Positions 196 through 55,440 of a stretch of DNA of 64,000 bases are shown piece after piece. Position 1 is the first letter of the stretch. Every line of letters starts with the position of its first letter. The notes beneath the pieces are model-generated. The model was not told where the DNA came from. It saw only the letters and a list, made by a program, of their open reading frames with translations, and did not search any database. A program made the translations under genes and the position numbers. The stretch is taken from sequence record NC_070882.1; one strand, written 5' to 3'.

Positions 196-549
196 ATGCC
201 TTATTATCAAGCTATTTTACCGCTCGTAGAAGCGCACCAGTGGTTTAAAAATGGTGACCATCCCATGGATCGCACTGTGAATGGAATCAACGAAGGTGCA
301 GTGGTTGGACGCCATATCAGTTATGGTAGTGTCCAAGGTGGAATGGACTGCCCTGTCTGCAATTGTAAGATGGCTCTTCATGGAATTCTTAAAGTTCGTA
401 TCGACGATAGTCCTTCTGTTGTCTGTCCCGGTGACTATATCGAGTTCATTCGAGATGATAAGAAACGCATCCTAAGTTATAGACTCCACCATAAAAAAGA
501 ATTTGAATCGATCTTTGAAAAAGTTATAGCAAATGGAGCTAAGAAATGA
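196..549 (+). CDS. Conserved phage protein of unknown function, possibly Zn-binding
   Basis: VEAHQWFKNGDHP...CPVC...HG...VCPGDYI pattern, recalled from a widespread phage family. GGAG RBS favours ATG 196 over 166. ATGA overlap with the next gene. Confidence 0.7.
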   Translation: MPYYQAILPLVEAHQWFKNGDHPMDRTVNGINEGAVVGRHISYGSVQGGMDCPVCNCKMALHGILKVRIDDSPSVVCPGDYIEFIRDDKKRILSYRLHHKKEFESIFEKVIANGAKK

Positions 550-1127
550 CTGCTGTTAATTACCCATTCGTAGATACCATGGATAAGTTTGATAAGATCA
601 CGAAAGGTCTTATCTTTGAACATCAAGCTGAAGGTGAAAGTGAAACTATGATTTCACATGAACTCTCTATTCTTGATAATGATGGAGTTGTTCATTCTCT
701 CCACTTCAATCAAATTACGAGTCTCATCGATACCATCACTGGTAAACATCCTTCACTTGAACTACCTCCACAATTATTTCTTATCACGCAATATTTGCTG
801 GAAGATCTTAAGGAAGTTGGGGAGAAGGGTTTTGTAATTACTGAATATTTTATTGATGTTCTTCCGTCTGGTAACAAAGCTATTTTCCGTGGTACACTTG
901 CACATAAATCCACTGTAGATGGACATCCCGATTTTGATCCGGAGTCTACGGTCGGTAAGAAAGAATTTGAATTCTCCCTTAATCAATTCAGTATTCTGCA
1001 ACAGATTGCACTGAGTCACTGCATCGCCAATCTCCATGAAGAATGTGCTGTTTTCCGTGGTACCTTTGATGTGGAATATACGTTCCATTGGACACCCTTC
1101 TCTTTCAATGTTAAATTCGCAGAGTAA
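546..1127 (+). CDS. chmB: Chimallin-interacting phage-nucleus protein ChmB (gp2 family)
   Basis: 193 aa starting MTAVNYPFVDTMDKFDKITKG; recognised from memory as near-identical to PA1C gp2. Lies next to DHFR. Confidence 0.8.
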   Translation: MTAVNYPFVDTMDKFDKITKGLIFEHQAEGESETMISHELSILDNDGVVHSLHFNQITSLIDTITGKHPSLELPPQLFLITQYLLEDLKEVGEKGFVITEYFIDVLPSGNKAIFRGTLAHKSTVDGHPDFDPESTVGKKEFEFSLNQFSILQQIALSHCIANLHEECAVFRGTFDVEYTFHWTPFSFNVKFAE

Positions 1128-2229: not shown

Positions 2230-4416
2230 CTATCGACCATAGAATCCACGAGAATGGATACTGCGGTCTTGTTGGAAGCGAGAAGTACGAACACGTCTGA
2301 CTCGATCGTCACGCACTTGTTTCAACATAGCGTCAATACCGACACCAGTTGTTTCTTCCATGTTAATACTCTTAGATAGATTACGGAGGCGCATTTCAAG
2401 TTTTGTGATTACGAATGGATTTGTCTCACCTTTGAGTTGAGCAATCAAATCTTCGAATTCTCCTTTATTTTGCTTCTCTTTATCTTCACGATATTTTTCT
2501 AGAGCAGTAAGCTCTACATCACGAGTAACAGCACGGGAGAAAATAGTCGCTGGGTTAATACCGTAGTAAGAAAGGTTTTGACCACGAATACATACCCAGT
2601 GAGCCAACAGCATGGAAATTACCATGTCGTCGTGGTTATCGCGGGTATGGTCAATCCGTCCATTCTTAATTGTCAAAGCCAGTAGTTCTGTAATCAGCGT
2701 CTTATCCGCCATTCTTCGACTACCATAATCCATGGCACTCGGTAGTGCTTCAAGGAACAAACTGTTACGAGAATACCGACCAGAACCGGAGGTATTGAAA
2801 CCAAAGTAACGTTTGAATCGATCGTAGAACGATGCAGGACGTTGAGACAACGGAGTCTGAATATCCCGAAACTCAGATTCTAGTACCGTATGCTCATCCA
2901 CGATTCTGTTAAAGATTCGCCGGAACGGATCTATACCAGCTTTGTGTAGTTGCATTACAACGAAGTCGATAAGTGCAGTACCCATCGATTTACGTTCAGG
3001 TACCCAAGTAATCGTTGAGTAACGGATTAATAGATTACCGATGAAAGCCGCAATGACAGGAACGGAAGTTTCATTATAACAACCAGCAGCCACTACCTCG
3101 TGTGTCTCCACATCAAATACAACCATGCCAGTGGCGTCGTTGTCAGACCCTAGAAGTTCACTGGGGTCCATTCCCATCATAAAACGACTTTCAGCCATTC
3201 TCTGATCAACTTCGTGTTTAGGAATGTACCAACGAATTGTATAACCGTCCGGTGTAATCTCTGTCCAGATTGGTTCACGCTCAGATGATTTCAATTGCTT
3301 TTTGTGTTCTGGTGATAATGGCGAACCTTCACCACCGACAGTCCAGATATTAAAGAAGTCTCGGTCAGCGATCTCGCCAAACGAACTAGATTCTTTAAGT
3401 TCCTGGAACAACCATTCATCTGTACGACCCAACTGGCGATGGTTAAAGGCTCCATAAATAATCGGCTTCTGATCGGCCTTGGATCCTTTCTCCATTACTA
3501 ACACTGCCATACGTTGGTTGACAAGATCAAACATCGTCTCAGACCAAGTGTGGCCACCAGTCATGAACTTATATGCGAACGCGCCGTCACGAGTGGTAAT
3601 GTTACCGGCAGTTGTTGTGAAGATGTTGCCGTATGGTTGGCCTTGACGCTTAGCTTCAGCACGTGCAGCAGAACCAGATGCCAGAGCAACAGGAAGAGAG
3701 ATCTCAATCAAGTTGATGTATGCAAATTCGTCGAACTGCATGATCGGTACAGTAAGACCACGACCAAGTTTGTCAGCAGCAATTTTATCGTTACGGCCAA
3801 CAGCTGTCTTGTATCGATTACCTAAACGAATACAGGTCATCAATTCATTGTTGTCTACATCGTTCGGGTTTGCCCAATGAATGTAATCGGGTAATAGATC
3901 TCGCATTACCTTAAGACGTTCAATGTTTGCTGTACGAAGTTTATTATCTTTAGTGATCAGGTTGATAGTGGTGTTCTCACCCCAGATATACATCATACCT
4001 GTCATCAAGATGTCAGTTGAAACAGATTTACCAGTCTGACGCGGTTGCAACAGACCAAAGTCTAGGTGGTTAAAAAAGCACCAGAAAAGTGCAATGTTAC
4101 CACGGTTAGCACGGAATGCGTTCGGAACGTTACCAGATGTCGCAGGGACTCGGGCAACTTCACGGAAGTAGTACCATGGATTGTATTTACATTCCAAGGC
4201 GATTTTCATTTTTGTTGCATCATCTAGATCGGGGTCATAGGGATCTACCCCCTGAAGATCTGGTTGAAGCAACGCTAGAATGAATTTCCAGTTTGCTATT
4301 TTAAGCTCATCTCTATAAAGAGCTGCTAATTTTAAGAATGTTTTATTTGACGTTTTTGTATCCGCTATCGCTGTTGGGAACTTCTCCCAATCATCGCGGA
4401 ATAAAATAAGTTCCAT
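2230..4416 (-). CDS. terL: Terminase large subunit (phiKZ gp25-like)
   Basis: Walker A QPRQTGKS, Walker B IMQFDE, C-terminal RNase H-like nuclease motifs (MGMDPS, HDDMVISMLL); 728 aa. Confidence 0.93.
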   Translation of the reverse strand: MELILFRDDWEKFPTAIADTKTSNKTFLKLAALYRDELKIANWKFILALLQPDLQGVDPYDPDLDDATKMKIALECKYNPWYYFREVARVPATSGNVPNAFRANRGNIALFWCFFNHLDFGLLQPRQTGKSVSTDILMTGMMYIWGENTTINLITKDNKLRTANIERLKVMRDLLPDYIHWANPNDVDNNELMTCIRLGNRYKTAVGRNDKIAADKLGRGLTVPIMQFDEFAYINLIEISLPVALASGSAARAEAKRQGQPYGNIFTTTAGNITTRDGAFAYKFMTGGHTWSETMFDLVNQRMAVLVMEKGSKADQKPIIYGAFNHRQLGRTDEWLFQELKESSSFGEIADRDFFNIWTVGGEGSPLSPEHKKQLKSSEREPIWTEITPDGYTIRWYIPKHEVDQRMAESRFMMGMDPSELLGSDNDATGMVVFDVETHEVVAAGCYNETSVPVIAAFIGNLLIRYSTITWVPERKSMGTALIDFVVMQLHKAGIDPFRRIFNRIVDEHTVLESEFRDIQTPLSQRPASFYDRFKRYFGFNTSGSGRYSRNSLFLEALPSAMDYGSRRMADKTLITELLALTIKNGRIDHTRDNHDDMVISMLLAHWVCIRGQNLSYYGINPATIFSRAVTRDVELTALEKYREDKEKQNKGEFEDLIAQLKGETNPFVITKLEMRLRNLSKSINMEETTGVGIDAMLKQVRDDRVRRVRTSRFQQDRSIHSRGFYGR

Positions 4417-4468
4417 GACCGTTTCCTTAAAGAAACAAAAGGTTCATACCTTTAGGGTTAATTTACGA

Positions 4469-4499
4469 CATAAAGCTTCCCCCGAAGGGAAAGCTCATG
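4469..4499. terminator. Hairpin of the CATAAAG family
   Basis: CATAAAGCTTCCCCCGAAGGGAAAGCTCATG. Confidence 0.65.
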
Positions 4500-4502
4500 T
4501 AT

Positions 4503-5153
4503 CTAGATTAACTCTAGTACCGGGCGCCAACCATAACCAGTGTTAGGTTGAGATGGTGCGTTCTGCCCCCATCCAGTTACGCCATTTGGTCCACCACGTA
4601 AGACTTTGAACCTAGGAGACCCTGTATTACCATTAGTAGGTGTCCATGTCCAAATACCGAGGTTACTTGGATGTACAAACCCAAGATCCTCATTACTTAA
4701 GTTCTCCCAAAATGTTCCAGTTGGATCATTTGCCGATACACGGTACATCAACTGACCCCACTCCGAGTTAGCTGGAGATCCACTGGCACCACCAGACAGA
4801 TAAACTATCTTACAATCAATATCCTTTACTTTTGACGTATTAGTATTAAAGCTATTGATAGCTGCTTCTAATTGATTAAAAGCCATTGAATGTCGAATAG
4901 TTTTAGTAGCAACTAAAAGCTTCCTGTCGTTTAAAGAGAACATTAACCAATCTACATCTGTTTGATCTGGCATTCGTGTTCCATATGGATTACCAGAAAA
5001 ACCATGTACATCGTTCATTTGTTCAGCGCCAATAAAATCGGCAGCTGTGACTATACCGTAATAACCTAGACTTGAATCACCAGCTATTAGTTCGGTAGGT
5101 AAAACACTTGGTTTAGCTCTTTTAGAGTTGACCGACAATAAAATTTCAATCAT
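4503..5153 (-). CDS. Putative virion structural protein (jumbo-phage multigene family)
   Basis: N-terminal IAGDSSLGYYG and C-terminal GWRPVLELI typical of phiKZ-like virion paralogues; lies in the late-strand cluster. Confidence 0.6.
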   Translation of the reverse strand: MIEILLSVNSKRAKPSVLPTELIAGDSSLGYYGIVTAADFIGAEQMNDVHGFSGNPYGTRMPDQTDVDWLMFSLNDRKLLVATKTIRHSMAFNQLEAAINSFNTNTSKVKDIDCKIVYLSGGASGSPANSEWGQLMYRVSANDPTGTFWENLSNEDLGFVHPSNLGIWTWTPTNGNTGSPRFKVLRGGPNGVTGWGQNAPSQPNTGYGWRPVLELI

Positions 5154-5186
5154 GGTCCAGCTCCTATTTGTTACATACTAAAACGA

Positions 5187-5218
5187 CATAAAGCCGTCTC
5201 TAATGAGACGGCACTATG
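5187..5218. terminator. Hairpin of the CATAAAG family
   Basis: CATAAAGCCGTCTC-taat-GAGACGGCACTATG. Confidence 0.65.
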
Positions 5219-5220
5219 CC

Positions 5221-6885
5221 TTAAGCACGTTTCAGTACTGGAATACCAGTCATTGCCAATTGAAGATCAGTATCGTACTCACGACGAATCCATTGGATGT
5301 AGAGAAGCTCTCCATCAGCAAGATCGTTGTTAACACGTAATTTATCTTTCCATTGTTCAACACTAAACTCGTATTTGTTGTGCAGGAAGTGCAATACAAA
5401 GTGAGTCGGTGTAGGTGCAACAACTTCGGAATCCGGATTCACCAGAGGCTCAGCTGCTTCGTACATTTTCCGCAGCCATGCTTCTTTGGTATTAGCGCCA
5501 TTCTGAAGACGCAGATCCCACGCGTTAGTCTGGATGTATTCCAGATCTGCTTTCAAACCACGACCATAAGCTGCATCTACATCTGGACGAGTATAGATTT
5601 CCCAATTAGCATCGCGGTTTTCACCGGAGGTCAGGAGTGCAACTTGGAACGTAGTAACAAAGCGGTGCGGTGCGAAACGGCCATCGACCTTGTTCAGGTT
5701 AACTGCATACGTCAGAGTCTGGAGATTACCATAACCTTTCGGATTGAAAGGTGCAGAGTTAACGCCAAGCTCCACCAAAGAAGTAACGTTGTAGAAACGT
5801 TGACGATCCAGGTTATAAAGCCAGAATTCCAGACGATAACCAGCGGTGACGTTTTGCCATACCGGGTATACGAACAGACGACATTCATATGCACCGTCAG
5901 CGGCTGTTGTACGAGCGATGTAGTTTTCTGTAATCCGTCGATTTGCTGTTGGTGTAAGAGCATAGGAAATTTCATCTTCTGCTAACTGGTAAGCAAGAGT
6001 AAGCGGGAACTCTTGTCCAATTTCAGTAGCGATGTAGTTTTCCATGCCAAACAAGAACATCGTCGAGTTATCAATACCACGACGTACTTTAGAACCACCA
6101 CGATAGTTAATCATACCAACCATCGGAAGAGATTCAACGTTTACGTTCAGCGGGAATTCAATAACCTTAGGATCGGCAGCAGACAGGAACGGACTCTCGA
6201 TCTCGATACCGGCAATGTACTTCTTCGAATTATCAGACTGTCGAATTGCTTTCGTGTTTTGTACGAGCAACTGTGCTATCGACACAACCCCGCCAAGGTC
6301 ATCGTAGGCCACCAAGGTGCAACGCTCACCGTCATCCATCTCCTCGGCTGTAAAACCAACCATAGGGGCCTTAATGACGTTCTGAGAGCCATTACCGACG
6401 GTTACTGTCTCAACTGGAATAAGTGGACCCGTGTAATCACCAGAGGGAGTGAAGAAAGCAGAGATGATCTTACCAAATTCTTCAGAGATATCACTACCCT
6501 TAAAGACTTTGTAACTAGCAACCATCGAGCCATAAAAATGCAGACGTTTATCGGGTGCGAGAGTATGGGGAATAACGCTGGTATCAAGGAACAGACGGTA
6601 GCTTTCGGAGCTATAGCCTGGACCTACGCCCACCAGTACGTTTTCTTCGCCATCGGGGTCAACTTTGGTTGGAGGATACCATTCTTTAAGAGTAGCTACG
6701 TGAGTACCCTCTTCGACATCCTCAACTGTGAACCAGCCATTCTCGCGGTCCCAAACGAGGTCCCCAATATTGGGGACCCACTTATTTACTTGTCCAGCTT
6801 GCTGGACGATATCTTTGCGGTTCCAAACCCACCAACCCCTATTAGGGTCCATGTAGTCGGAATTCCCGTATGGTACAGGAAGCAT
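5221..6885 (-). CDS. Virion structural protein (phiKZ gp26-like)
   Basis: 554 aa; synteny between terminase and the sheath block. Confidence 0.75.
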
Positions 6886-41095: not shown

Positions 41096-42961
41096 ATGAT
41101 TCGTGATACCGAAACTCAAAACACTCAAGCTCAAGCCAACAACGCTCCGGCTCAAGCTACTCCGCGCGCACAACAGGAAGCTCCTCGTATGCAACAAGCT
41201 GCACCTCAAGCTCTGCAAGGCGGTATTTCCGGCCTGCCGAACATGTTCAAACGTTCCGGTCGTACTGATGGCGGCGACGCCCGTGCGAGCGAAGCGCTGC
41301 AAGTAATGACCCGCGTTGGCAAAGATGCCATCGACCATCAAGACCTGGAAAACGATTTCCAGATTCTGCGTTTCGACCGTGATGCCAACCGTGTTGGCTA
41401 CTCCGCGCTGCTGATCGTCAAGCACGCTGCTGGTGGTAACGGTATCATCGTAGTTCGTCCGCTGATCATGCCGAACCCGGCAATCACCCTGCCTCCGCGT
41501 CAGGTTACCATTCAGAACGGCATGAGCCACGATCGCTTCGATGTAGACGTCGAAGTACAAGACGTATTCACCGTTCAGTACTGGAACCGCATCTGCGAAT
41601 TCGTTCGTCAGACCACCGGTCGTCCGAAGGCTGAAGTACACCCGGCTGGCCCGCTGCCGATCCCGGCTGAATTCGATCTGAAAGACGAAGTCCTGCTGAA
41701 AGACATTCTGATCCGTTCCGTCAACCTGTGTGACGACGTTCTGGCTAAGAAAGCTGGCGAGACTCCGTTCCAGATCGCAATGCTGCGCGGCCAAGATGAA
41801 ACCCTGGCTGCCAAGATGGACTTCTCCGGTCGTCCGGTAATGGACAGCGTCGGTAACCCGATCAAGTCCGATATCGTGATCAGCCTGAACCGTACCAAGA
41901 AACAAGGTCAACAAGAGAACGAGTTCTACGAAGCAGACACCATGCTGAACCAGGTGTCGGTACAAGTAACCCTGGAGTACACCCCCACTCCGCAAGCCCA
42001 GATGTTCGGTCAACAGACCCAACCGCTGCCGCCGTTCTCCCCGGCGATCCTGGTAACCGACATTCGTCAGGCCAACTGGATCAAGGCAAACACTCTGGAA
42101 CTGTACCTCTTCGCTCTGTCGAACGCCTTCCGCGTAACCGCTGGCCAGGCTTGGGCTCGTAAGTTCCTGCCTCAAGTTGGTAAAGTTAAAGACCTGGGTG
42201 ACATCGGTGCTCTGGGTTGGCTGTCCAACCTGGGTAAGAAGATCGATACCAAGTCCGATACCTTCACCGATCAGAACTTCGCTGATCTGATGCTGAGCAT
42301 GGTTCGTCCGAACCCGTCCTTCCTGATCGATCTGGATCGCATGGGCGACAACGCAGCACTGGACGTAATCTTCCTGGATGCCATGGGTGGCCCGAACCAA
42401 CAGAAAGCTACTGCCGCGATCATTCGCGCTGTACAGAACCTGGTTGGTGGTGGCTTCGAGCGCTTCTTCGACTTCAACACTCAGCCGATCATTGCATCGA
42501 CTGGCACTGAAGTGAACAAGGGCTACTACTGGGATGGCGACGAGAAACGTGACCGTCGTGACCTGGATGCACTGGGTGCACTGAACGCTGCTGAGGGCAA
42601 CCAACAAGAGTGGATGTCCTGGTACGGTACTCAATGCAACCCGAACATCCATCCGGAACTGCGTAACAAGCAATCCAAGAACTACGACCGTGCGTTCCTG
42701 GGTGCTGTAACCTACACCACTCGTGCACATCGTGGTATCTTCAACCCGAAGTTCATCGAGGGTCTGGATAAGGCGATTGCTGCTGCTGGTCTGACTGTAG
42801 CAATGGACAACGTTGCACAGGTCTTCGGTGCTCAGCGCTTCGTTGGCAACACCATGATCCAAGACTTCGCTGTCGGTTCTACCGCACAGGTTGTCAACGG
42901 CATGGGCGTTGGTGGCGGCTACCAGATGAACATGGTAGGTTCGGTTGGTACTCTGTACTAA
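41096..42961 (+). CDS. chmA: Chimallin, major phage-nucleus shell protein
   Basis: 621 aa with a disordered Gln-rich N-terminus; FKRSGR, RFDRD, YYWDGDEKRDRRDLD motifs; immediately upstream of nvRNAP beta'; strong codon bias. Confidence 0.95.
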   Translation: MIRDTETQNTQAQANNAPAQATPRAQQEAPRMQQAAPQALQGGISGLPNMFKRSGRTDGGDARASEALQVMTRVGKDAIDHQDLENDFQILRFDRDANRVGYSALLIVKHAAGGNGIIVVRPLIMPNPAITLPPRQVTIQNGMSHDRFDVDVEVQDVFTVQYWNRICEFVRQTTGRPKAEVHPAGPLPIPAEFDLKDEVLLKDILIRSVNLCDDVLAKKAGETPFQIAMLRGQDETLAAKMDFSGRPVMDSVGNPIKSDIVISLNRTKKQGQQENEFYEADTMLNQVSVQVTLEYTPTPQAQMFGQQTQPLPPFSPAILVTDIRQANWIKANTLELYLFALSNAFRVTAGQAWARKFLPQVGKVKDLGDIGALGWLSNLGKKIDTKSDTFTDQNFADLMLSMVRPNPSFLIDLDRMGDNAALDVIFLDAMGGPNQQKATAAIIRAVQNLVGGGFERFFDFNTQPIIASTGTEVNKGYYWDGDEKRDRRDLDALGALNAAEGNQQEWMSWYGTQCNPNIHPELRNKQSKNYDRAFLGAVTYTTRAHRGIFNPKFIEGLDKAIAAAGLTVAMDNVAQVFGAQRFVGNTMIQDFAVGSTAQVVNGMGVGGGYQMNMVGSVGTLY

Positions 42962-50006: not shown

Positions 50007-50753
50007 ATGTCTCAACAATCCCAAGGCCCTGCCCTCTCTCCGTTCTCTGTAATGTCCACTTGGCTACATGCTGATCCGGTAGAAGGTTCTCAGAAACGTC
50101 CTAACCTGCGTTTCGGTGTCTTTGGTAACGTACCTCGCCTGACCGTACGTACTAACGTTCAAGGTGATCTGAATAACGGTAAGATTGAATTCAAAACTGA
50201 CCTGGCTACTTTTGCAGCTGCAATGAAGTATGCACGGGATCTTGTCGATGGTAAAGATGTTCCTCAAGAACGTAAGTTTGTTCACCAAGATGACTTTGTT
50301 GGCGGTAAAAAGATCGATAAGATCATTCCGATCACCACACTGGTAATCGGCCGCGAACAGAACTCTGGTCGTATTTACATTGCTCTTATCTCTTCTCAGC
50401 AACAGCGCCCGCGTATTCGGTTCTTCTTCGGTCCGTCGAAATATCACACCATCCTGAATGGTGATGGTTCTCCCATCTCTCCGAAAGAGATGTCCGAAGC
50501 TTACGCTACCGGTTTCCTGGAACCGGCCACTGCAATCATTTACCAGATGATGGTAAGCAGTTTTGACCAGAACGCTAAGAACGTAGCCAACCCAGCTAAC
50601 TTTGGTAACGGTGGCGGCGGTGGTCAACGTCAAGGTGGCTATAATGGCGGCAACCGTGGTGGTAATAGCGGTGGTGCTCCTCAAGGTTACAATCGTCCGT
50701 CCTCCGGTGGTTTCCAGGACAATGGCTTTGACGATTCCATTCCTGACTTCTAA
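50007..50753 (+). CDS. chmC: ChmC-like nucleic-acid-binding protein (phiKZ gp67-like)
   Basis: Directly before the gp68-like and PicA genes; folded domain plus a Gly/Asn/Arg-rich tail ending DDSIPDF. Confidence 0.72.
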   Translation: MSQQSQGPALSPFSVMSTWLHADPVEGSQKRPNLRFGVFGNVPRLTVRTNVQGDLNNGKIEFKTDLATFAAAMKYARDLVDGKDVPQERKFVHQDDFVGGKKIDKIIPITTLVIGREQNSGRIYIALISSQQQRPRIRFFFGPSKYHTILNGDGSPISPKEMSEAYATGFLEPATAIIYQMMVSSFDQNAKNVANPANFGNGGGGGQRQGGYNGGNRGGNSGGAPQGYNRPSSGGFQDNGFDDSIPDF

Positions 50754-52472: not shown

Positions 52473-54107
52473 ATGCACGGAATCAACATGGGCATTTCCG
52501 CTGGTGCAGCTGTCAACTCGAAGCTGTCCGTACAGAACTTTGTTCTGGTGGAAACCGGCACCTATCAAGAACAGCACATTCGACCTTTCTCGATTAATGC
52601 TAACCAAGAAGTAGCTCGTCAACTGGAACAAGCTACAAATGGTGGCATGAACCTTCGGGTAAGTGCTGTACAAGAAGTAGCTTCTTCGGTTATCACTCCC
52701 CAAGCATCGGTAGAAGGTAGTGTCGGTATTGCACATGGCTGGCGTTCTCGCCGGTTCCGCTTCTTGATGAAAGTGAATGAGCAACATCCATTCATTGCGG
52801 GAACGCTGACTCAACGTATCTTCTTTGGCTATAGTGACCACGCTGACGCATCTCAGAATTATCTGCCGGATGACATGCGTATCTACTTCAACTCCGAAAC
52901 TATCATTGCTCAAGCTATTCAACAAACCATTCATGGTCCCCAACACGTTGCGTCGATCGTAGGTTCCAACCAGATCGTTTCTCCTGTTGACATGATGGGT
53001 GGAATGAATGGAATGTTCTCTCGTGCAACTGCTCACCTGATCCGTCCTGAAGATATCTTTAGTATTGGTCAAACAGCGCATGTGGCACAGAAACTGCAAA
53101 GCTCTGGTTTGTTTGACGGAATGATCAATCGGTCCATCGACCATCGCACGATGGTTGGTGAAGGAGGAGCATACAAGTATAGCCAACGTCGAGATACCTC
53201 TCCAACTCGTTATCTGTCGAATACTCTTGGCGCATACCAACATGCTGTCAAAGAGAATGCAATGGAGAACCAAGGGGATGATCTGTTCGGGGCTCCTGAT
53301 AAAGATGTAATGTTTGGTGAAGCTGCTGCCCAGTGCAGGAACCAGCAGATCCATACTAACACCTTCTTGGCTGTTCTTAAAGATCATGCCGGGTATATGG
53401 AGAATGGCTATATCACTTTCCGTGATCTCAAGCGGCTCTTCCCTGAATGCGGCACCCAACAGGTTACTCAGTTCTCCATGAACGATGGCCGTTCAATCCG
53501 TCGTATTTCTCAGGCAGAAGACTCCGAAGTTTGGAGCGGTGCAGACTATACCTCCATTGGTGCAAGTCTGTTGGCACAGACCATTCCGTCGATCATGATG
53601 GATACCTTCCTCCGCACTTGCTCGTTTGCTGTAACTAATGGTACTGGTCCGAATAACTATTCGTTCGAGTTCCATCCGCAGAACTCTAAGGCTATCATTG
53701 ATAACCTGGACATGCGTCAATACATTCTGGAATTCGAACGCCGCCTGGCTATCGATATCCTGAACAACATCACCCGTGGTAACCAGCTGCCGTTCCGTAT
53801 CTCGATGCATTCGGACTTGGCTGGTGACTCGATCATCGATATTGCCATCGGTGGTCAGTCGCTGACTCGTTTCATTGCACCGACCTTTACGGATAGTCTG
53901 TTCTCCCCGATGATTACCCGTAACGAGCAACACCCGACTAACCTGTCTGGTGATATGCTGTGGCTGGTACAAGAAGTAATTCCCAATCCGACTCAACATC
54001 AGGCTCTTCAGTCTGTCGGTTACCAACATCCGGTAGCTGCACCCATCATGATGCCTAACGCTATTAACCAAGGAGCAAGCAATGTCGTTGATCTTGGACT
54101 CGTATAA
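52473..54107 (+). CDS. picA: Phage-nucleus protein import factor PicA/Imp1 (phiKZ gp69-like)
   Basis: 544 aa; ETGTYQEQHIRPF, GWRSRRFRFLM, LIRPEDIF motifs; synteny after gp68. Confidence 0.8.
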   Translation: MHGINMGISAGAAVNSKLSVQNFVLVETGTYQEQHIRPFSINANQEVARQLEQATNGGMNLRVSAVQEVASSVITPQASVEGSVGIAHGWRSRRFRFLMKVNEQHPFIAGTLTQRIFFGYSDHADASQNYLPDDMRIYFNSETIIAQAIQQTIHGPQHVASIVGSNQIVSPVDMMGGMNGMFSRATAHLIRPEDIFSIGQTAHVAQKLQSSGLFDGMINRSIDHRTMVGEGGAYKYSQRRDTSPTRYLSNTLGAYQHAVKENAMENQGDDLFGAPDKDVMFGEAAAQCRNQQIHTNTFLAVLKDHAGYMENGYITFRDLKRLFPECGTQQVTQFSMNDGRSIRRISQAEDSEVWSGADYTSIGASLLAQTIPSIMMDTFLRTCSFAVTNGTGPNNYSFEFHPQNSKAIIDNLDMRQYILEFERRLAIDILNNITRGNQLPFRISMHSDLAGDSIIDIAIGGQSLTRFIAPTFTDSLFSPMITRNEQHPTNLSGDMLWLVQEVIPNPTQHQALQSVGYQHPVAAPIMMPNAINQGASNVVDLGLV

Positions 54108-55401
54108 GTCTGTACTCCCCTCGTTCGCCTGCGAGTTCGATGAAGAAGGTTATATCAGCCTCCGTAATCCGGTAGGTACTGCTTCTCCTTCGACCGTAGA
54201 CGGTAAACGTCTTGTAATCCCAACCGATAAGTTCCTTCGCAAGGGATTCGGTGAAGACTTCCAGCCGTTCCACCCGCTGAGTGAAGCATTGAGTCGCCGG
54301 GGTACTTCCCCGGTGATTCAGTATCTGCAACGCGCAGCAAAAGCACACATTAGTTTCGTCGTCCACAAAATGGCCGAACAACTTCTGACCATCGCAGCGG
54401 ACAAGTCGTCCCACAAGGACCTGCCGCCGGATGCAACTGACTTCCTGAAGAAACTGGCAGATGCGGATAAAGCAACTGTCGGTCTGTTCGAAAAACTGAT
54501 GCCTGCTGCTACTAAGAAGAACCGACTGGTTGCAGTTTACTTGAAGAATGGCGGTACTTTCGATGGTAAGAAAGTAAACCGTATGGCGATCATTCGCTTC
54601 CCGATCCTGGAAGATCTTCAGGCTGAAACTGATGATGTTCTTGGTATCAAGATGGCGAAGAAACAACGTAAGGTTCTCACTGCGCTGTTCAAACTGATCG
54701 TTCCGTTTGGTGACAATCCGGAAGAGTATGCCTTTGGTACTACCAGCCGTGTTGCACCTTATTACACCAGTCTTCTGACTGCGTATCACAAAGTAATCGT
54801 GATGCTCAATCAGCTGATTAACCGGTACGCGATTCCACTGCAAATCCCCGTCAATCTTATTCCTGTGTTTGATCTGGATCTGATCGACGAGTTCCCGAAG
54901 ATCTATAACCTTATCCCTCCGCTGAATGGCAACCTCGGTGGTCGTGATGAGGATACTCCGGAAACTGCCGAAGCTGTACAAACCCAGCAACAAGCACCGA
55001 GCGTTACTGCTCCACAAGCCAGTACTCCTCAGCTGACTCGTCCCGCCGCAGTTGTTAGCAAACCTGTAGAAAAAGATACTGTCTCCATGAGCGAATTCAT
55101 GGCTGCACAGAATCCCCAACCGCAGATGATGCAGCAGCAAATGGGAATGATGATGCCGATGAATAACGGCATGATGATGCCAGGCAATGGCATGATGCAG
55201 ATGAATGGCATGGGTGGGATGATGCAACCTATGCAAATGGGTAACATGCAGCCCCAGGGTATCCAAGCGAACGCGCCCATTCCCGCGTGGATGGGTGGCC
55301 AACAACAGGGCATGATGATGATGGGTAACGGTCAACCGGCCAACCCGTACATGCAGGCTGTGGCTGGCATGCGTCAAACCAATGGTCTTGGATTGGTGTA
55401 A
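54082..55401 (+). CDS. Conserved core protein (phiKZ gp70-like) with a Met/Gln/Gly-rich C-terminal tail
   Basis: 439 aa; 26-nt overlap with picA; FHPLSE motif. Confidence 0.75.
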   Translation: MSLILDSYKSVLPSFACEFDEEGYISLRNPVGTASPSTVDGKRLVIPTDKFLRKGFGEDFQPFHPLSEALSRRGTSPVIQYLQRAAKAHISFVVHKMAEQLLTIAADKSSHKDLPPDATDFLKKLADADKATVGLFEKLMPAATKKNRLVAVYLKNGGTFDGKKVNRMAIIRFPILEDLQAETDDVLGIKMAKKQRKVLTALFKLIVPFGDNPEEYAFGTTSRVAPYYTSLLTAYHKVIVMLNQLINRYAIPLQIPVNLIPVFDLDLIDEFPKIYNLIPPLNGNLGGRDEDTPETAEAVQTQQQAPSVTAPQASTPQLTRPAAVVSKPVEKDTVSMSEFMAAQNPQPQMMQQQMGMMMPMNNGMMMPGNGMMQMNGMGGMMQPMQMGNMQPQGIQANAPIPAWMGGQQQGMMMMGNGQPANPYMQAVAGMRQTNGLGLV

Positions 55402-55406
55402 GACGG

Positions 55407-55440
55407 CATAAAGCAGGGGGCCTTAGGGTCCCCTGCTATT
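55407..55440. terminator. Bidirectional terminator
   Basis: CATAAAGCAGGGGGCC-ttag-GGTCCCCTGCT. Confidence 0.8.

What the first reader, a model, noticed from the sequence alone, without database searches (positions are those of the whole stretch)
54093..55401. PicA and its neighbour end in the same C-terminal motif, LGLV
Seen: PicA ends ...NVVDLGLV* (ctt gga ctc gta taa, 54093-54107) and the next protein ends ...QTNGLGLV* (ctt gga ttg gtg taa, 55387-55401). The codons differ, so the match is at protein level. Both follow Q/P/M/N-rich disordered tails, and PicA's motif is kept within a dual-coding overlap. Established: PicA/Imp1 is the nucleus import factor at the shell. Inference: a C-terminal docking code that targets import components to a common partner such as ChmA, ChmB or ChmC.
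Basis: partly seen in the sequence, partly recalled or inferred. Interest (0 to 1): 0.65.

Follow-up and report, generated by a model that had tools for sequence, protein, structure and literature searches.

The report
Shared C-terminal tip on PicA and neighbour
Two neighbouring proteins of a nucleus-forming Pseudomonas jumbo phage, the import factor PicA/Imp1 and the uncharacterised gp70-family protein, each end a floppy tail with the same short greasy tip; the tip is kept and changes in step in hundreds of related phages, which gives a testable handle on how the phage nucleus import machinery is held together.

Summary
The window is Pseudomonas phage PS119XW/PA1C. ORF 52473-54107 is the phiKZ gp69 (PicA/Imp1) orthologue and ends DLGLV*. 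ORF 54082-55401 is the phiKZ gp70 / PhiPA3 gp64 orthologue and ends GLGLV*.

In 120 PicA-like and 110 gp70-like proteins from genomes and metagenomes, the last 3-4 residues are conserved ([LF]-G-L-[LVI], FEGL, xGL[ILV], xxGL). The 30-150 residues before them are disordered and unalignable. Within a genome the two tips change in parallel: LGLV/LGLV, LGIL/LGIM, TSVL/DSVL, SRLL/GSRL, FEGL/xNGL. In outgroups the pairs are SGSL/TGAL (Xanthomonas) and DWKL/QYRL (Burkholderia).

In the conserved 26-nt overlap, gp70 residues 6-7 vary through changes that are silent for PicA's Gly-Leu. No other gene of this phage carries such an end.

Best reading (0.6): a C-terminal docking peptide on a flexible leash that puts both shell-associated proteins on one common partner. 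It is a two-protein motif, not a general targeting code, and gp70 is not a shown import factor. I found no report of it in the papers held here.

The parts
52473..54107 (+). PicA/Imp1 (phiKZ gp69, PhiPA3 gp63) orthologue, 544 aa: folded core residues 14-505, disordered tail 509-544
   Evidence: homology, PHROG 3141; AF2, mean pLDDT 81.6, tail under 50
53997..54104 (+). PicA disordered C-terminal tail (residues 509-544), containing the YQHPVA island and the tip
54070..54075 (+). Shine-Dalgarno AAGGAG of the gp70-like gene, read as Q-G-A in PicA's tail. It explains the conserved (Q)G island at positions -13 to -11 of PicA.
   Evidence: GGAG 8-10 nt before the ATG in eight phages
54082..54107 (+). 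26-nt dual-coding overlap: PicA N-V-V-D-L-G-L-V-stop and gp70-like M-S-L-I-L-D-S-Y-K. The register is conserved in six phages of five genera.
54093..54104 (+). PicA C-terminal tip L-G-L-V (stop at 54105-54107)
   Evidence: Family-wide: LGLL 38, FGLL 21, FEGL 13, SGLL 11, LGLV 7 of 120.
54082..55401 (+). phiKZ gp70 / PhiPA3 gp64 / 201phi2-1 gp126 orthologue, 439 aa
   Evidence: PHROG 3520
54082..54951 (+). gp70-like folded N-domain (residues 1-290), pLDDT above 95, no convincing known fold
   Evidence: Foldseek nothing; VIA best Z 5.6 to ribosome hibernation factors; no Pfam match
54952..55398 (+). gp70-like disordered tail (residues 291-439): uncharged, Met/Gln/Gly/Pro-rich, with conserved islands (SMSEFMAA helix, PAW, ANPYMQA, tip)
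55087..55107 (+). Short predicted helix (residues 336-342, within SMSEFMAAQNP), a conserved island in the middle of the tail
55387..55398 (+). gp70-like C-terminal tip L-G-L-V (stop at 55399-55401); not overlapped by any gene
   Evidence: Family-wide: LGLI 18, SNGL 9, TGLI 8, MGLI 7, NSLL 5, LGLV 4 of 110.
55412..55437 (+). Intrinsic-terminator-like hairpin (11 pairs, then a T-rich tail) ending the transcription unit after the gp70-like gene
41096..42961 (+). ChmA (chimallin) shell protein, candidate receptor. Its own tail ends ...GSVGTLY, a different tip.
546..1127 (+). ChmB (PA1C gp2, PDB 7UYX), candidate receptor
   Evidence: E 1e-125 to 7UYX; PMC10643120
50007..50753 (+). ChmC/Imp6 (phiKZ gp67) orthologue; its Gly-rich tail ends DDSIPDF (context)

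Best explanation
The two LGLV ends are this phage's copy of a conserved C-terminal short linear motif. The motif is an aliphatic tip of four to five residues ([LF]-G-L-[LVI]-COOH and lineage variants). It sits at the free end of an intrinsically disordered tail on two adjacent, co-transcribed, early, shell-associated proteins: PicA/Imp1 and the gp70/gp64-family protein.

Most likely mechanism: each tip, with its terminal carboxylate, inserts into one hydrophobic pocket of a common third protein at the phage nuclear shell. Both proteins are then tethered to the same site by flexible leashes of about 35 and 150 residues. This resembles how SSB tips, clamp-binding peptides and chimallin's own tail segments dock.

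Shown here: the motif, its conservation, its parallel change in the two proteins, selection in PicA's reading frame, its restriction to these two genes, and the lack of predicted docking onto either protein's own core.

Inferred: that it binds a partner, and that the partner is common to both. The partner's identity is open. My rough split is ChmA lattice pockets 0.2, ChmB 0.15, a clamp-like pocket (Rhc or host DnaN) 0.1, another conserved shell or import protein 0.15.
For: (1) Conservation. Entropy anchored at the C-terminus is 0.49/1.38/1.32/1.97 bits at positions -1 to -4 in 120 PicA-like proteins, against 3.3-3.7 bits further up the tail. In 110 gp70-like proteins it is 1.48/1.60/2.24 at -1 to -3 against about 3.2.

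(2) Parallel change.
- 42 same-contig pairs share 2.0 of their last 3 residues, against 1.46 in shuffled pairings.
- Two odd pairs were confirmed on contigs: ITSVL/ADSVL and DLGIL/GLGIM.
- Outgroups have other paired tips: Xanthomonas RTH11 SGSL/TGAL and Burkholderia FLC9 DWKL/QYRL.
- With one pair per tip lineage, the last 3 residues show 25 identities against 11.1 when shuffled, p <= 2e-4.

(3) Selection on PicA's frame in the overlap. gp70 residue 6 is D or A (V in a metagenomic relative) and residue 7 is S, C or F. PicA's Gly (GGA/GGC) and Leu (CTC/TTG/CTT) stay unchanged. The PicA L-to-I change in L034 is silent in gp70.

(4) Independence from the overlap. The gp70 tip is not overlapped and is followed by a terminator. 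PicA tips also persist where the genes do not overlap (Psa21 clade FEGL, phiKZ FQVL).

(5) The tips are always the very last residues and are free: pLDDT about 40, not docked in cis.

(6) Literature.
- PhiPA3 gp63 and gp64 both localise to the shell and both came down with GFP-ChmB.
- ChmB has conserved surface residues whose mutation is dominant-negative without affecting ChmA or portal binding (PMC10643120).
- C-terminally tagged PicA does not rescue a knock-down (PMC11087766).
- The negative Imp1-gp70 pull-down used tagged proteins (Imp1 in pET29b, 'Imp1-His', 'gp70-FLAG'). If those tags were C-terminal, as the names suggest, the tips were blocked.
Against: - No binding was tested.
- Phylogeny-aware tests have too few independent changes to reach significance. 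At -2 there are 3 changes: 2 concordant, 0 opposite. At -3 there are 2 concordant, 0 opposite.
- The lineage representatives were chosen by eye and are nested.
- Part of PicA's tail conservation is explained by gp70's ribosome-binding site, start codon and Leu5/Tyr8 codons.
- PicA-sfGFP still localises to a shell punctum.
- The tip is weak in phiKZ itself (FQVL/GRLL). No paired tip is recognisable in Erwinia, Serratia, Ralstonia, Vibrio or Klebsiella relatives; Goslar's ends (KGNF/VNRF) share only a final Phe. It is therefore not a universal feature of the import system.
- phiKZ gene 070 is not among the hits listed in an antisense screen.
Confidence: 0.6

Rival explanations
1. The tips are cohesive 'stickers' of phase-separating tails rather than ligands of a folded pocket. 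In this reading the uncharged Met/Phe/Gln-rich gp70 tail, with PicA's shorter tail, forms a nucleoporin-like condensate at the import site, and the aliphatic ends add valency.
For: - The gp70 tail is uncharged (4-13% charged) and rich in M, Q, G, P and N. Hydrophobic residues are spaced along it. Phabio has six FG/GF dipeptides (LFG, TFG, GFG) and the window has nine MG/GM.
- The neighbouring ChmC forms condensates through its N/G-rich tail (PMC11077065).
Against: - A sticker need not sit at the exact C-terminus, yet the motif is terminal in over 200 sequences and is not repeated within the tails.
- Serratia and Ralstonia orthologues have highly charged R/D/E tails (58-63% charged), so tail chemistry is not conserved.
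- Residue-specific parallel changes such as WKL/YRL and SVL/SVL fit a shaped pocket better.
Confidence: 0.15
2. The tip mimics a sliding-clamp-binding peptide. It would dock in the hydrophobic cleft of the host beta clamp (DnaN) or of the phage's clamp-derived Rhc protein.
For: - PicA tips NLGLL/DLGLL resemble the C-terminal clamp-binding peptides QLGLF (Pol II) and QLVLGL (Pol IV). The consensus is QL[SD]LF, usually C-terminal (PMC3716654).
- Rhc has a clamp-derived domain, was predicted and reported to bind PicA, and forms a similar single punctum.
Against: - The defining Gln is absent: position -5 is D/N/S in PicA and G in gp70.
- Rhc and DnaN occur in or with all chimalliviruses, while the tip is confined to one part of the family and takes unrelated forms (WKL, GSL) elsewhere.
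- The published all-against-Rhc screen named PicA but not gp70.
- No paper held here links DnaN to these phages.
Confidence: 0.1
3. By-product or coincidence. PicA's end would be frozen only because it overlaps the start of the gp70 gene, and the resemblance to gp70's own end would be chance.
For: - The Shine-Dalgarno, the ATG, and the Leu5 (TTG) and Tyr8 (TAT) codons of gp70 constrain PicA positions -13 to -11, -8/-7, -4 and -1.
- A single shared four-residue end in one genome is only moderately unlikely: seven gene pairs genome-wide share their last four residues.
Against: - The gp70 tip is conserved without any overlap.
- PicA's -3 Gly and -2 Leu are kept by changes that alter gp70 residues 6 and 7.
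- Tips persist in lineages without an overlap.
- Parallel changes occur in several lineages.
- Only about 0.007 adjacent pairs sharing four residues are expected.
Confidence: 0.04
4. The aliphatic C-terminus is a stability or turnover signal (C-degron or chaperone/protease tag) that sets the level of both proteins.
For: Non-polar C-termini are read by several bacterial proteases (general knowledge, not tested here). Both proteins are early and presumably needed in low, fixed amounts, given the single punctum.
Against: - The tips do not end in Ala-Ala like ssrA-type tags.
- Lineage-specific parallel changes to WKL/YRL or SVL/SVL are hard to explain with a conserved host protease.
- No data support turnover.
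Confidence: 0.05

Closest known systems
SSB C-terminal tip (DDDIPF) on an intrinsically disordered linker
   Same: A folded N-domain, a low-complexity G/Q/P-rich linker, and a very short conserved tip at the extreme C-terminus that docks into partner pockets. A C-terminal tag would block it.
   Different: The tip here is purely aliphatic, with no acidic run. Here two different proteins share one tip (many-to-one), whereas in SSB one protein serves many partners. The receptor is unknown. The ChmC neighbour, not PicA or gp70, carries the truly SSB-like end.
Bacterial beta-clamp-binding motif (QL[SD]LF; Pol II QLGLF, Pol IV QLVLGL)
   Same: A short, mostly C-terminal peptide shared by several proteins that compete for one hydrophobic cleft. 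The L-G-L core is identical to that of Pol II and Pol IV (PMC3716654).
   Different: The conserved Gln is missing. The proteins sit at the shell, not at the replisome. Outgroup variants (WKL, GSL, SVL) do not fit the clamp motif.
Chimallin (ChmA) N- and C-terminal tail segments that dock onto neighbouring protomers
   Same: Same organelle and same principle: a low-complexity linker plus a short hydrophobic terminal segment that plugs into another subunit (PMC12908238). ChmA tails here also end in a conserved tip, G-x-[LFWMV]-Y.
   Different: The ChmA tip is aromatic (..TLY..SFY..TWY), is not the same motif, and does not co-vary with the PicA/gp70 tips. Simple mimicry of ChmA's last segment is therefore not supported.
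FG-nucleoporin domains of the eukaryotic nuclear pore
   Same: An uncharged, Q/N/G/P-rich disordered domain studded with hydrophobic residues (Met here, Phe-Gly in Phabio-type relatives). It sits on a protein at the boundary of a nucleus-like compartment, next to the import factor.
   Different: There is no regular repeat. Tail chemistry is not conserved across the family (R/D/E-rich in Serratia and Ralstonia phages). No evidence of a pore or a selective phase. This is an analogy only.

Membership tests
PicA/Imp1 (phiKZ gp69) family | Sequence homology to phiKZ gp69 / PhiPA3 gp63 over the whole core | tested here: met
   tblastn 49.6% identity over 94% of the query, E 1e-155 to PHIKZ069. 67% identity to PhiPA3 gp63 (P0115). 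PHROG 3141, E 2e-163.
PicA/Imp1 (phiKZ gp69) family | Conserved gene block (ChmC-like, gp68-like, PicA, gp70-like, nvRNAP beta) in a genome that encodes ChmA | tested here: met
   Same gene order in the window and in the fourteen other phage records and two contigs examined. ChmA lies at 41096-42961.
PicA/Imp1 (phiKZ gp69) family | Shell punctum and a requirement for selective protein import | not testable with these tools
   Known for phiKZ, PhiPA3 and Goslar only (PMC11087766; bioRxiv 10.1101/2024.03.27.586873).
phiKZ gp70 / PhiPA3 gp64 family | Homology of the N-terminal ~290-residue domain, and position directly after PicA | tested here: met
   48.6% identity over residues 11-290 to PHIKZ070. 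60% identity to PhiPA3 gp64 (P0003). PHROG 3520, E 3e-120.
C-terminal docking short linear motif on a disordered tail | Motif lies at the extreme C-terminus of a disordered region | tested here: met
   AF2 pLDDT below 50 for both tails. The motif is terminal in all but a few fragments of 230 sequences.
C-terminal docking short linear motif on a disordered tail | An island of conservation in an otherwise fast-evolving tail, under selection in its own reading frame | tested here: met
   Entropy profile. In the overlap, substitutions are silent for PicA but change gp70 residues.
C-terminal docking short linear motif on a disordered tail | Binds a defined pocket on a partner protein | not testable with these tools
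No binding data exist in the papers held here.
Beta-clamp-binding motif | Conserved Gln at motif position 1 | tested here: not met
   Position -5 is D 52, N 25, S 17 of 120 in PicA-like proteins and G 60 of 110 in gp70-like proteins. Consensus taken from PMC3716654.
Beta-clamp-binding motif | Hydrophobic residues at motif positions 2, 4 and 5, usually at the C-terminus | tested here: met
   L-G-L-[LVI] at the C-terminus.
Mimic of ChmA's own C-terminal segment | Same terminal motif as ChmA, varying together with it | tested here: not met
   ChmA ends GTLY, GSFY, SSFY, GTWY, GMMY, TMVY in the Pseudomonas clade and FLR, SRW, FGG, NLF elsewhere.
ChmB as the receptor | ChmB is present wherever the paired tip is present | tested here: inconclusive
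   ChmB was found in phiKZ, 201phi2-1, Phabio, Viktualia, Psa21 and Temi. Even a nine-sequence profile did not find it in Noxifer, RTH11 or FLC9, which have paired tips. ChmB diverges fast (22-33% identity), so absence is not shown.
FG-nucleoporin-like cohesive domain | Low-charge disordered domain with recurring hydrophobic motifs | tested here: inconclusive
   Met 18% and nine MG/GM in the window; six FG/GF in Phabio; 4-13% charged in Pseudomonas and Erwinia phages. There is no regular repeat, and the tails in Serratia and Ralstonia phages are 58-63% charged.

The most novel reading that the evidence does not exclude
The gp70/gp64 family is a nucleoporin-like component of the phage nucleus. 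Its folded N-domain would sit at the shell, and its uncharged Met/Phe/Gln-rich tail would form a cohesive selective phase at the single PicA import site. The shared C-terminal tip would be the plug that fixes both PicA and this barrier protein to the same pocket of the shell lattice. In this reading a bacteriophage has independently evolved an anchored, FG-like permeability barrier.
Probability: 0.1. Interest if true: 0.9.

Novelty: new member of a known kind. Interest (0 to 1): 0.6.

Why it matters
How the phage nucleus imports proteins is an open question. No pore has been seen, PicA/Imp1 has no known fold or anchoring mechanism, and the conserved gene next to it has no assigned function.

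A four-residue tip that is shared, conserved and changes in parallel gives a precise and cheap experimental handle: deletion, one-residue extension, tip swaps and peptide pull-downs. These could find the common docking site on the shell.

It also offers a possible explanation for two published observations. C-terminally tagged PicA is non-functional. Pull-downs with what appear to be C-terminally tagged Imp1 and gp70 found no interaction. Shell-protein interaction screens should therefore be repeated with free C-termini.

More broadly, at least four proteins of the shell gene block are built the same way, as a folded domain plus a low-complexity leash plus a terminal plug: ChmA, ChmC, PicA and gp70. 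This suggests a general assembly principle for this organelle.

Tried and rejected
No partner was tested, and this gives no verdict either way.
- No whole genome was held for the window. I rebuilt 299,999 of the 301,543 bases from the public record in six pieces.
- Mimicry of ChmA's own last tail segment was considered and rejected, because the ChmA tips are a different, aromatic motif.
- Docking of either tip onto its own protein's core is not predicted by AF2 with deep alignments. This is weak evidence only.
- Function of the gp70 N-domain remains open. There is no Pfam match and no solved relative by sequence. Foldseek against the PDB found nothing. VIA-align's best match was Z 5.6 to ribosome hibernation factors over residues 72-254, below the level the tool calls trustworthy. 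The ESM Atlas gave no usable hit.
- The word search found only three ChmB relatives, too few for a useful alignment.
- The phylogeny-aware co-variation test (treekit independent pairs) had too few independent changes to reach significance.
- The Nature 2025 Imp1 paper (Kokontis et al.) is not held. I used its preprint instead.
- A literature search for DnaN with these phages found nothing.
- Earlier scan notes on this genome do not touch this locus.
Full report
**What the window is**

The region is identical to Pseudomonas phage vB_PaeM_PS119XW (NC_070882.1) at the same coordinates. It is 99.3-99.8% identical to PA1C, phiHQ, HHBS36_1, BRkr and phiLBG22, all Pawinskivirus-type nucleus-forming jumbo phages.

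ORF 52473-54107 (+, 544 aa) is the orthologue of phiKZ gp69, that is PicA/Imp1. tblastn gives 49.6% identity over 94% of the query, E 1e-155, and PHROG 3141 matches.

ORF 54082-55401 (+, 439 aa) is the orthologue of phiKZ gp70, PhiPA3 gp64 and 201phi2-1 gp126. tblastn gives 48.6% identity over residues 11-290, and PHROG 3520 matches.

Neither protein has a Pfam match. The block order in the window is ChmC-like, gp68-like, PicA, gp70-like, a small gene on the opposite strand, then the nvRNAP beta subunit. The same order appears in every relative I opened.

**Checking the observation**

The two ends are exactly as described:
- PicA ends ...NVVDLGLV*, with CTT GGA CTC GTA TAA at 54093-54107.
- The next protein ends ...QTNGLGLV*, with CTT GGA TTG GTG TAA at 55387-55401.

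The genes overlap by 26 nt. AlphaFold2 with alignments of 119 and 106 relatives gives confident cores: PicA 14-505, and gp70-like 1-290 with pLDDT above 95. It leaves PicA 509-544 and gp70-like 291-439 disordered, with the tips at pLDDT about 40. The gp70 tail is 18% Met, 16% Gln, 11% Gly and 10% Pro, with 7% charged residues.

I rebuilt 299,999 of the phage's 301,543 bases from the public record. Among all six-frame ORFs, these are the only two real genes ending G-[LIVM]-[LIVMF]. They are also the only adjacent pair among 377 genes that shares its last four residues; about 0.007 such pairs are expected by chance.

**Conservation in relatives**

The word search returned 111 gp70-like and 120 PicA-like proteins, mostly from metagenomes, down to 27-38% identity.

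Nearly all PicA-like proteins end in LGLL (38), FGLL (21), FEGL (13), SGLL (11) or LGLV (7). gp70-like proteins end in LGLI (18), SNGL (9), TGLI (8), MGLI (7), NSLL (5) or LGLV (4).

Entropy measured from the C-terminus:
- PicA-like: 0.49, 1.38, 1.32 and 1.97 bits at positions -1 to -4, against 3.3-3.7 bits further up the tail.
- gp70-like: 1.48, 1.60 and 2.24 bits at -1 to -3, against about 3.2.

The motif is always the very end of the protein.

**Parallel change in the two proteins**

I matched 42 pairs to the same contig. They share on average 2.0 of their last three residues, against 1.46 in shuffled pairings. No shuffle out of 20,000 reached the observed value, but this test is not corrected for phylogeny.

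A tree of the two cores with tails left out shows three clades with characteristic pairs:
- LGL[LV] with xGL[ILV]
- FEGL with xxGL
- FGLL with x[ST]LL

Within these clades there are odd pairs. Two were confirmed as adjacent genes on single contigs...ITSVL* with ...ADSVL* (L033), and ...DLGIL* with ...GLGIM* (L034). Others are SRLL with GSRL, and the window's own LGLV with LGLV.

Two outgroup phages have paired tips of other kinds:
- Xanthomonas RTH11: ...NSGSL* and ...GTGAL*
- Burkholderia FLC9: ...GDWKL* and ...QQYRL*

Using one pair per tip lineage (19 lineages), the last three residues show 25 identities against 11.1 in shuffles, p <= 2e-4. Among the 12 Leu-type lineages the figures are 23 against 14.3, p = 4e-4.

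Two caveats apply. I chose the lineage representatives by eye and they are nested. The formal independent-pairs test found only two or three independent changes per position. All were concordant or neutral and none was opposite, but that is too few for significance.

No pairing is recognisable in Erwinia Ea35-70, Serratia Moabite and PCH45, Ralstonia RSF1, Vibrio Yong or Klebsiella Eowyn. Goslar's two ends (KGNF, VNRF) share only a final Phe. In phiKZ itself the tips are degenerate: FQVL and GRLL.

**The overlap: what it explains and what it does not**

The 26-nt overlap has the same register in PS119XW, HPP-Temi, Phabio, 201phi2-1, Viktualia and Noxifer.

Several conserved islands in PicA's tail are by-products of gp70's translation start:
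- The (Q)G(A) at -13 to -11 is the GGAG Shine-Dalgarno.
- N/H/Y followed by V/A at -8 and -7 contains the ATG.
- The -4 codon (NTT) and the -1 codon (NTA) share bases with gp70's conserved Leu5 (TTG) and Tyr8 (TAT).

PicA's Gly at -3 and Leu at -2 are different. They are maintained while gp70 residue 6 changes between Asp and Ala (Val in a metagenomic relative) and residue 7 between Ser, Cys and Phe. The substitutions are silent in PicA's frame and non-synonymous in gp70's. In L034 the reverse holds: PicA's Leu-to-Ile change is silent in gp70.

PicA tips also persist where the genes do not overlap, in the Psa21 clade and in phiKZ. The gp70 tip lies outside any overlap and is followed by a terminator hairpin at 55412-55437. 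Selection therefore acts on the tips themselves.

**What the literature adds**

- In PhiPA3, gp63 (PicA) and gp64 (the gp70 orthologue) both localise to the nuclear shell. Both were recovered with GFP-tagged ChmB.
- ChmB has two conserved surface residues (Q53, A159) whose mutation is dominant-negative without affecting binding to ChmA or the portal. The authors infer further partners (PMC10643120).
- In phiKZ, gp70 was listed among nuclear proteins and did not co-purify with Imp1. In that experiment the proteins carried tags: Imp1 was in pET29b and is called Imp1-His, and gp70 is called gp70-FLAG (bioRxiv 10.1101/2024.03.27.586873). If the tags were C-terminal, as the names suggest, the tips were blocked.
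- PicA with a C-terminal sfGFP still forms the single shell punctum but fails to rescue a knock-down. The authors read this as the C-terminus being important (PMC11087766).
- None of the papers I could read mentions the motif. The Nature version of the Imp1 study is not held.

**Mechanism and candidate partners**

The anatomy is that of a docking short linear motif: a folded domain, a flexible low-complexity leash, and a short conserved terminal plug shared by two proteins. The simplest reading is that both plug into one pocket of a third protein at the shell. Neither tip is predicted to fold back on its own core, which is weak evidence against a pocket on PicA or gp70 themselves.

*ChmB* (window 546-1127; PDB 7UYX is the PA1C protein) fits the pull-down data and has the unexplained conserved surface. 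However, even with a nine-sequence profile I could not find ChmB in Noxifer, RTH11 or FLC9, which have paired tips. ChmB diverges fast, so this is inconclusive.

*ChmA* is universal and has known tail-binding pockets. Its own tail ends in a different, aromatic tip (G-x-[LFWMV]-Y) that does not vary with the PicA/gp70 tips. Simple mimicry is therefore not supported.

*A clamp-like pocket.* The tips NLGLL and DLGLL resemble the C-terminal clamp-binding peptides QLGLF and QLVLGL (PMC3716654). The clamp-derived phage protein Rhc is reported to bind PicA. Against this, the defining Gln is absent and the outgroup variants do not fit.

**The gp70 tail**

Besides the tip, the tail carries three further conserved islands:
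- a short helix, SMSEFMAA, residues 336-342
- a (L/A)PW motif
- an ANP[FY]M.A motif

Its chemistry is uncharged and studded with Met here and with Phe-Gly in Phabio-type relatives. This recalls FG-nucleoporin domains. However, Serratia and Ralstonia orthologues carry R/D/E-rich tails instead, so I treat the comparison as an analogy and as the most novel reading still open.

The N-domain has no convincing known fold.

**Verdict**

- The docking-peptide interpretation is the best-supported reading (0.6), but it is unproven.
- The partner is unknown.
- 'Import components' and 'code' overstate what is shown.
- The motif appears to be unreported and is easy to test.

Noticed in passing
window 50007-50753 (+); also L001, L003, L004, L006, L009, L010, L032, L033, L034, L036: ChmC/Imp6 orthologues across many chimallivirus clades end their Asn/Gly-rich disordered tail in an acidic-aromatic tip. 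Examples: DDSIPDF here, DEDMPSF in phiKZ, FDNDIPW in Moabite, SDFDDISF in RSF1, FDGLAF in Goslar, SEDLPF in FLC9. These closely resemble the bacterial SSB C-terminal tip. The ChmC paper describes the N/G-rich and S/D/E-rich regions but never mentions SSB.
   Followed up: partly
window 41096-42961 (+) and ChmA loci L017-L023: ChmA tails in the Pseudomonas clade end in a conserved G-x-[LFWMV]-Y tip (GTLY, GSFY, SSFY, GTWY, GMMY, TMVY). This is a third kind of terminal plug in the same gene block.
   Followed up: partly
L004 (Pseudomonas phage Viktualia, PV037725.1) 4146-5570: The public record annotates the long antisense ORF (minus strand, XYH45924.1) instead of the real gp70 orthologue on the plus strand. 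That orthologue starts at locus 4146 and ends ...GNGMGLI. The window has the same spurious 437-aa antisense ORF at 54064-55377.
   Followed up: partly
window 54082-54951 (+): The gp70-family N-domain folds with very high confidence (pLDDT above 95) but matches no solved fold convincingly. A run of weak VIA-align hits (Z 4.3-5.6) to ribosome hibernation factors (RaiA/HPF) covers residues 72-254.
   Followed up: partly
L009 (Moabite), L010 (RSF1), L039 (PCH45): gp70 orthologues: In Serratia and Ralstonia phages the gp70 orthologue carries an Arg/Asp/Glu-rich tail (58-63% charged, RD/RE repeats) in place of the uncharged Met/Gln tail. The tail chemistry has been swapped wholesale on a conserved N-domain.
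   Followed up: no
window 4503-5153 (-): A 216-aa protein annotated as a virion structural protein also has a Gly/Asn/Pro-rich end finishing in a hydrophobic tip (...GYGWRPVLELI). It is the only other gene in the phage with a low-complexity tail plus an aliphatic end.
   Followed up: no
PS119XW record 199921-258856 (outside the window; L014-L016): Five small ORFs end in the same tripeptide VNT, two of them in GVNT. They are probably a family of small paralogous genes.
   Followed up: no
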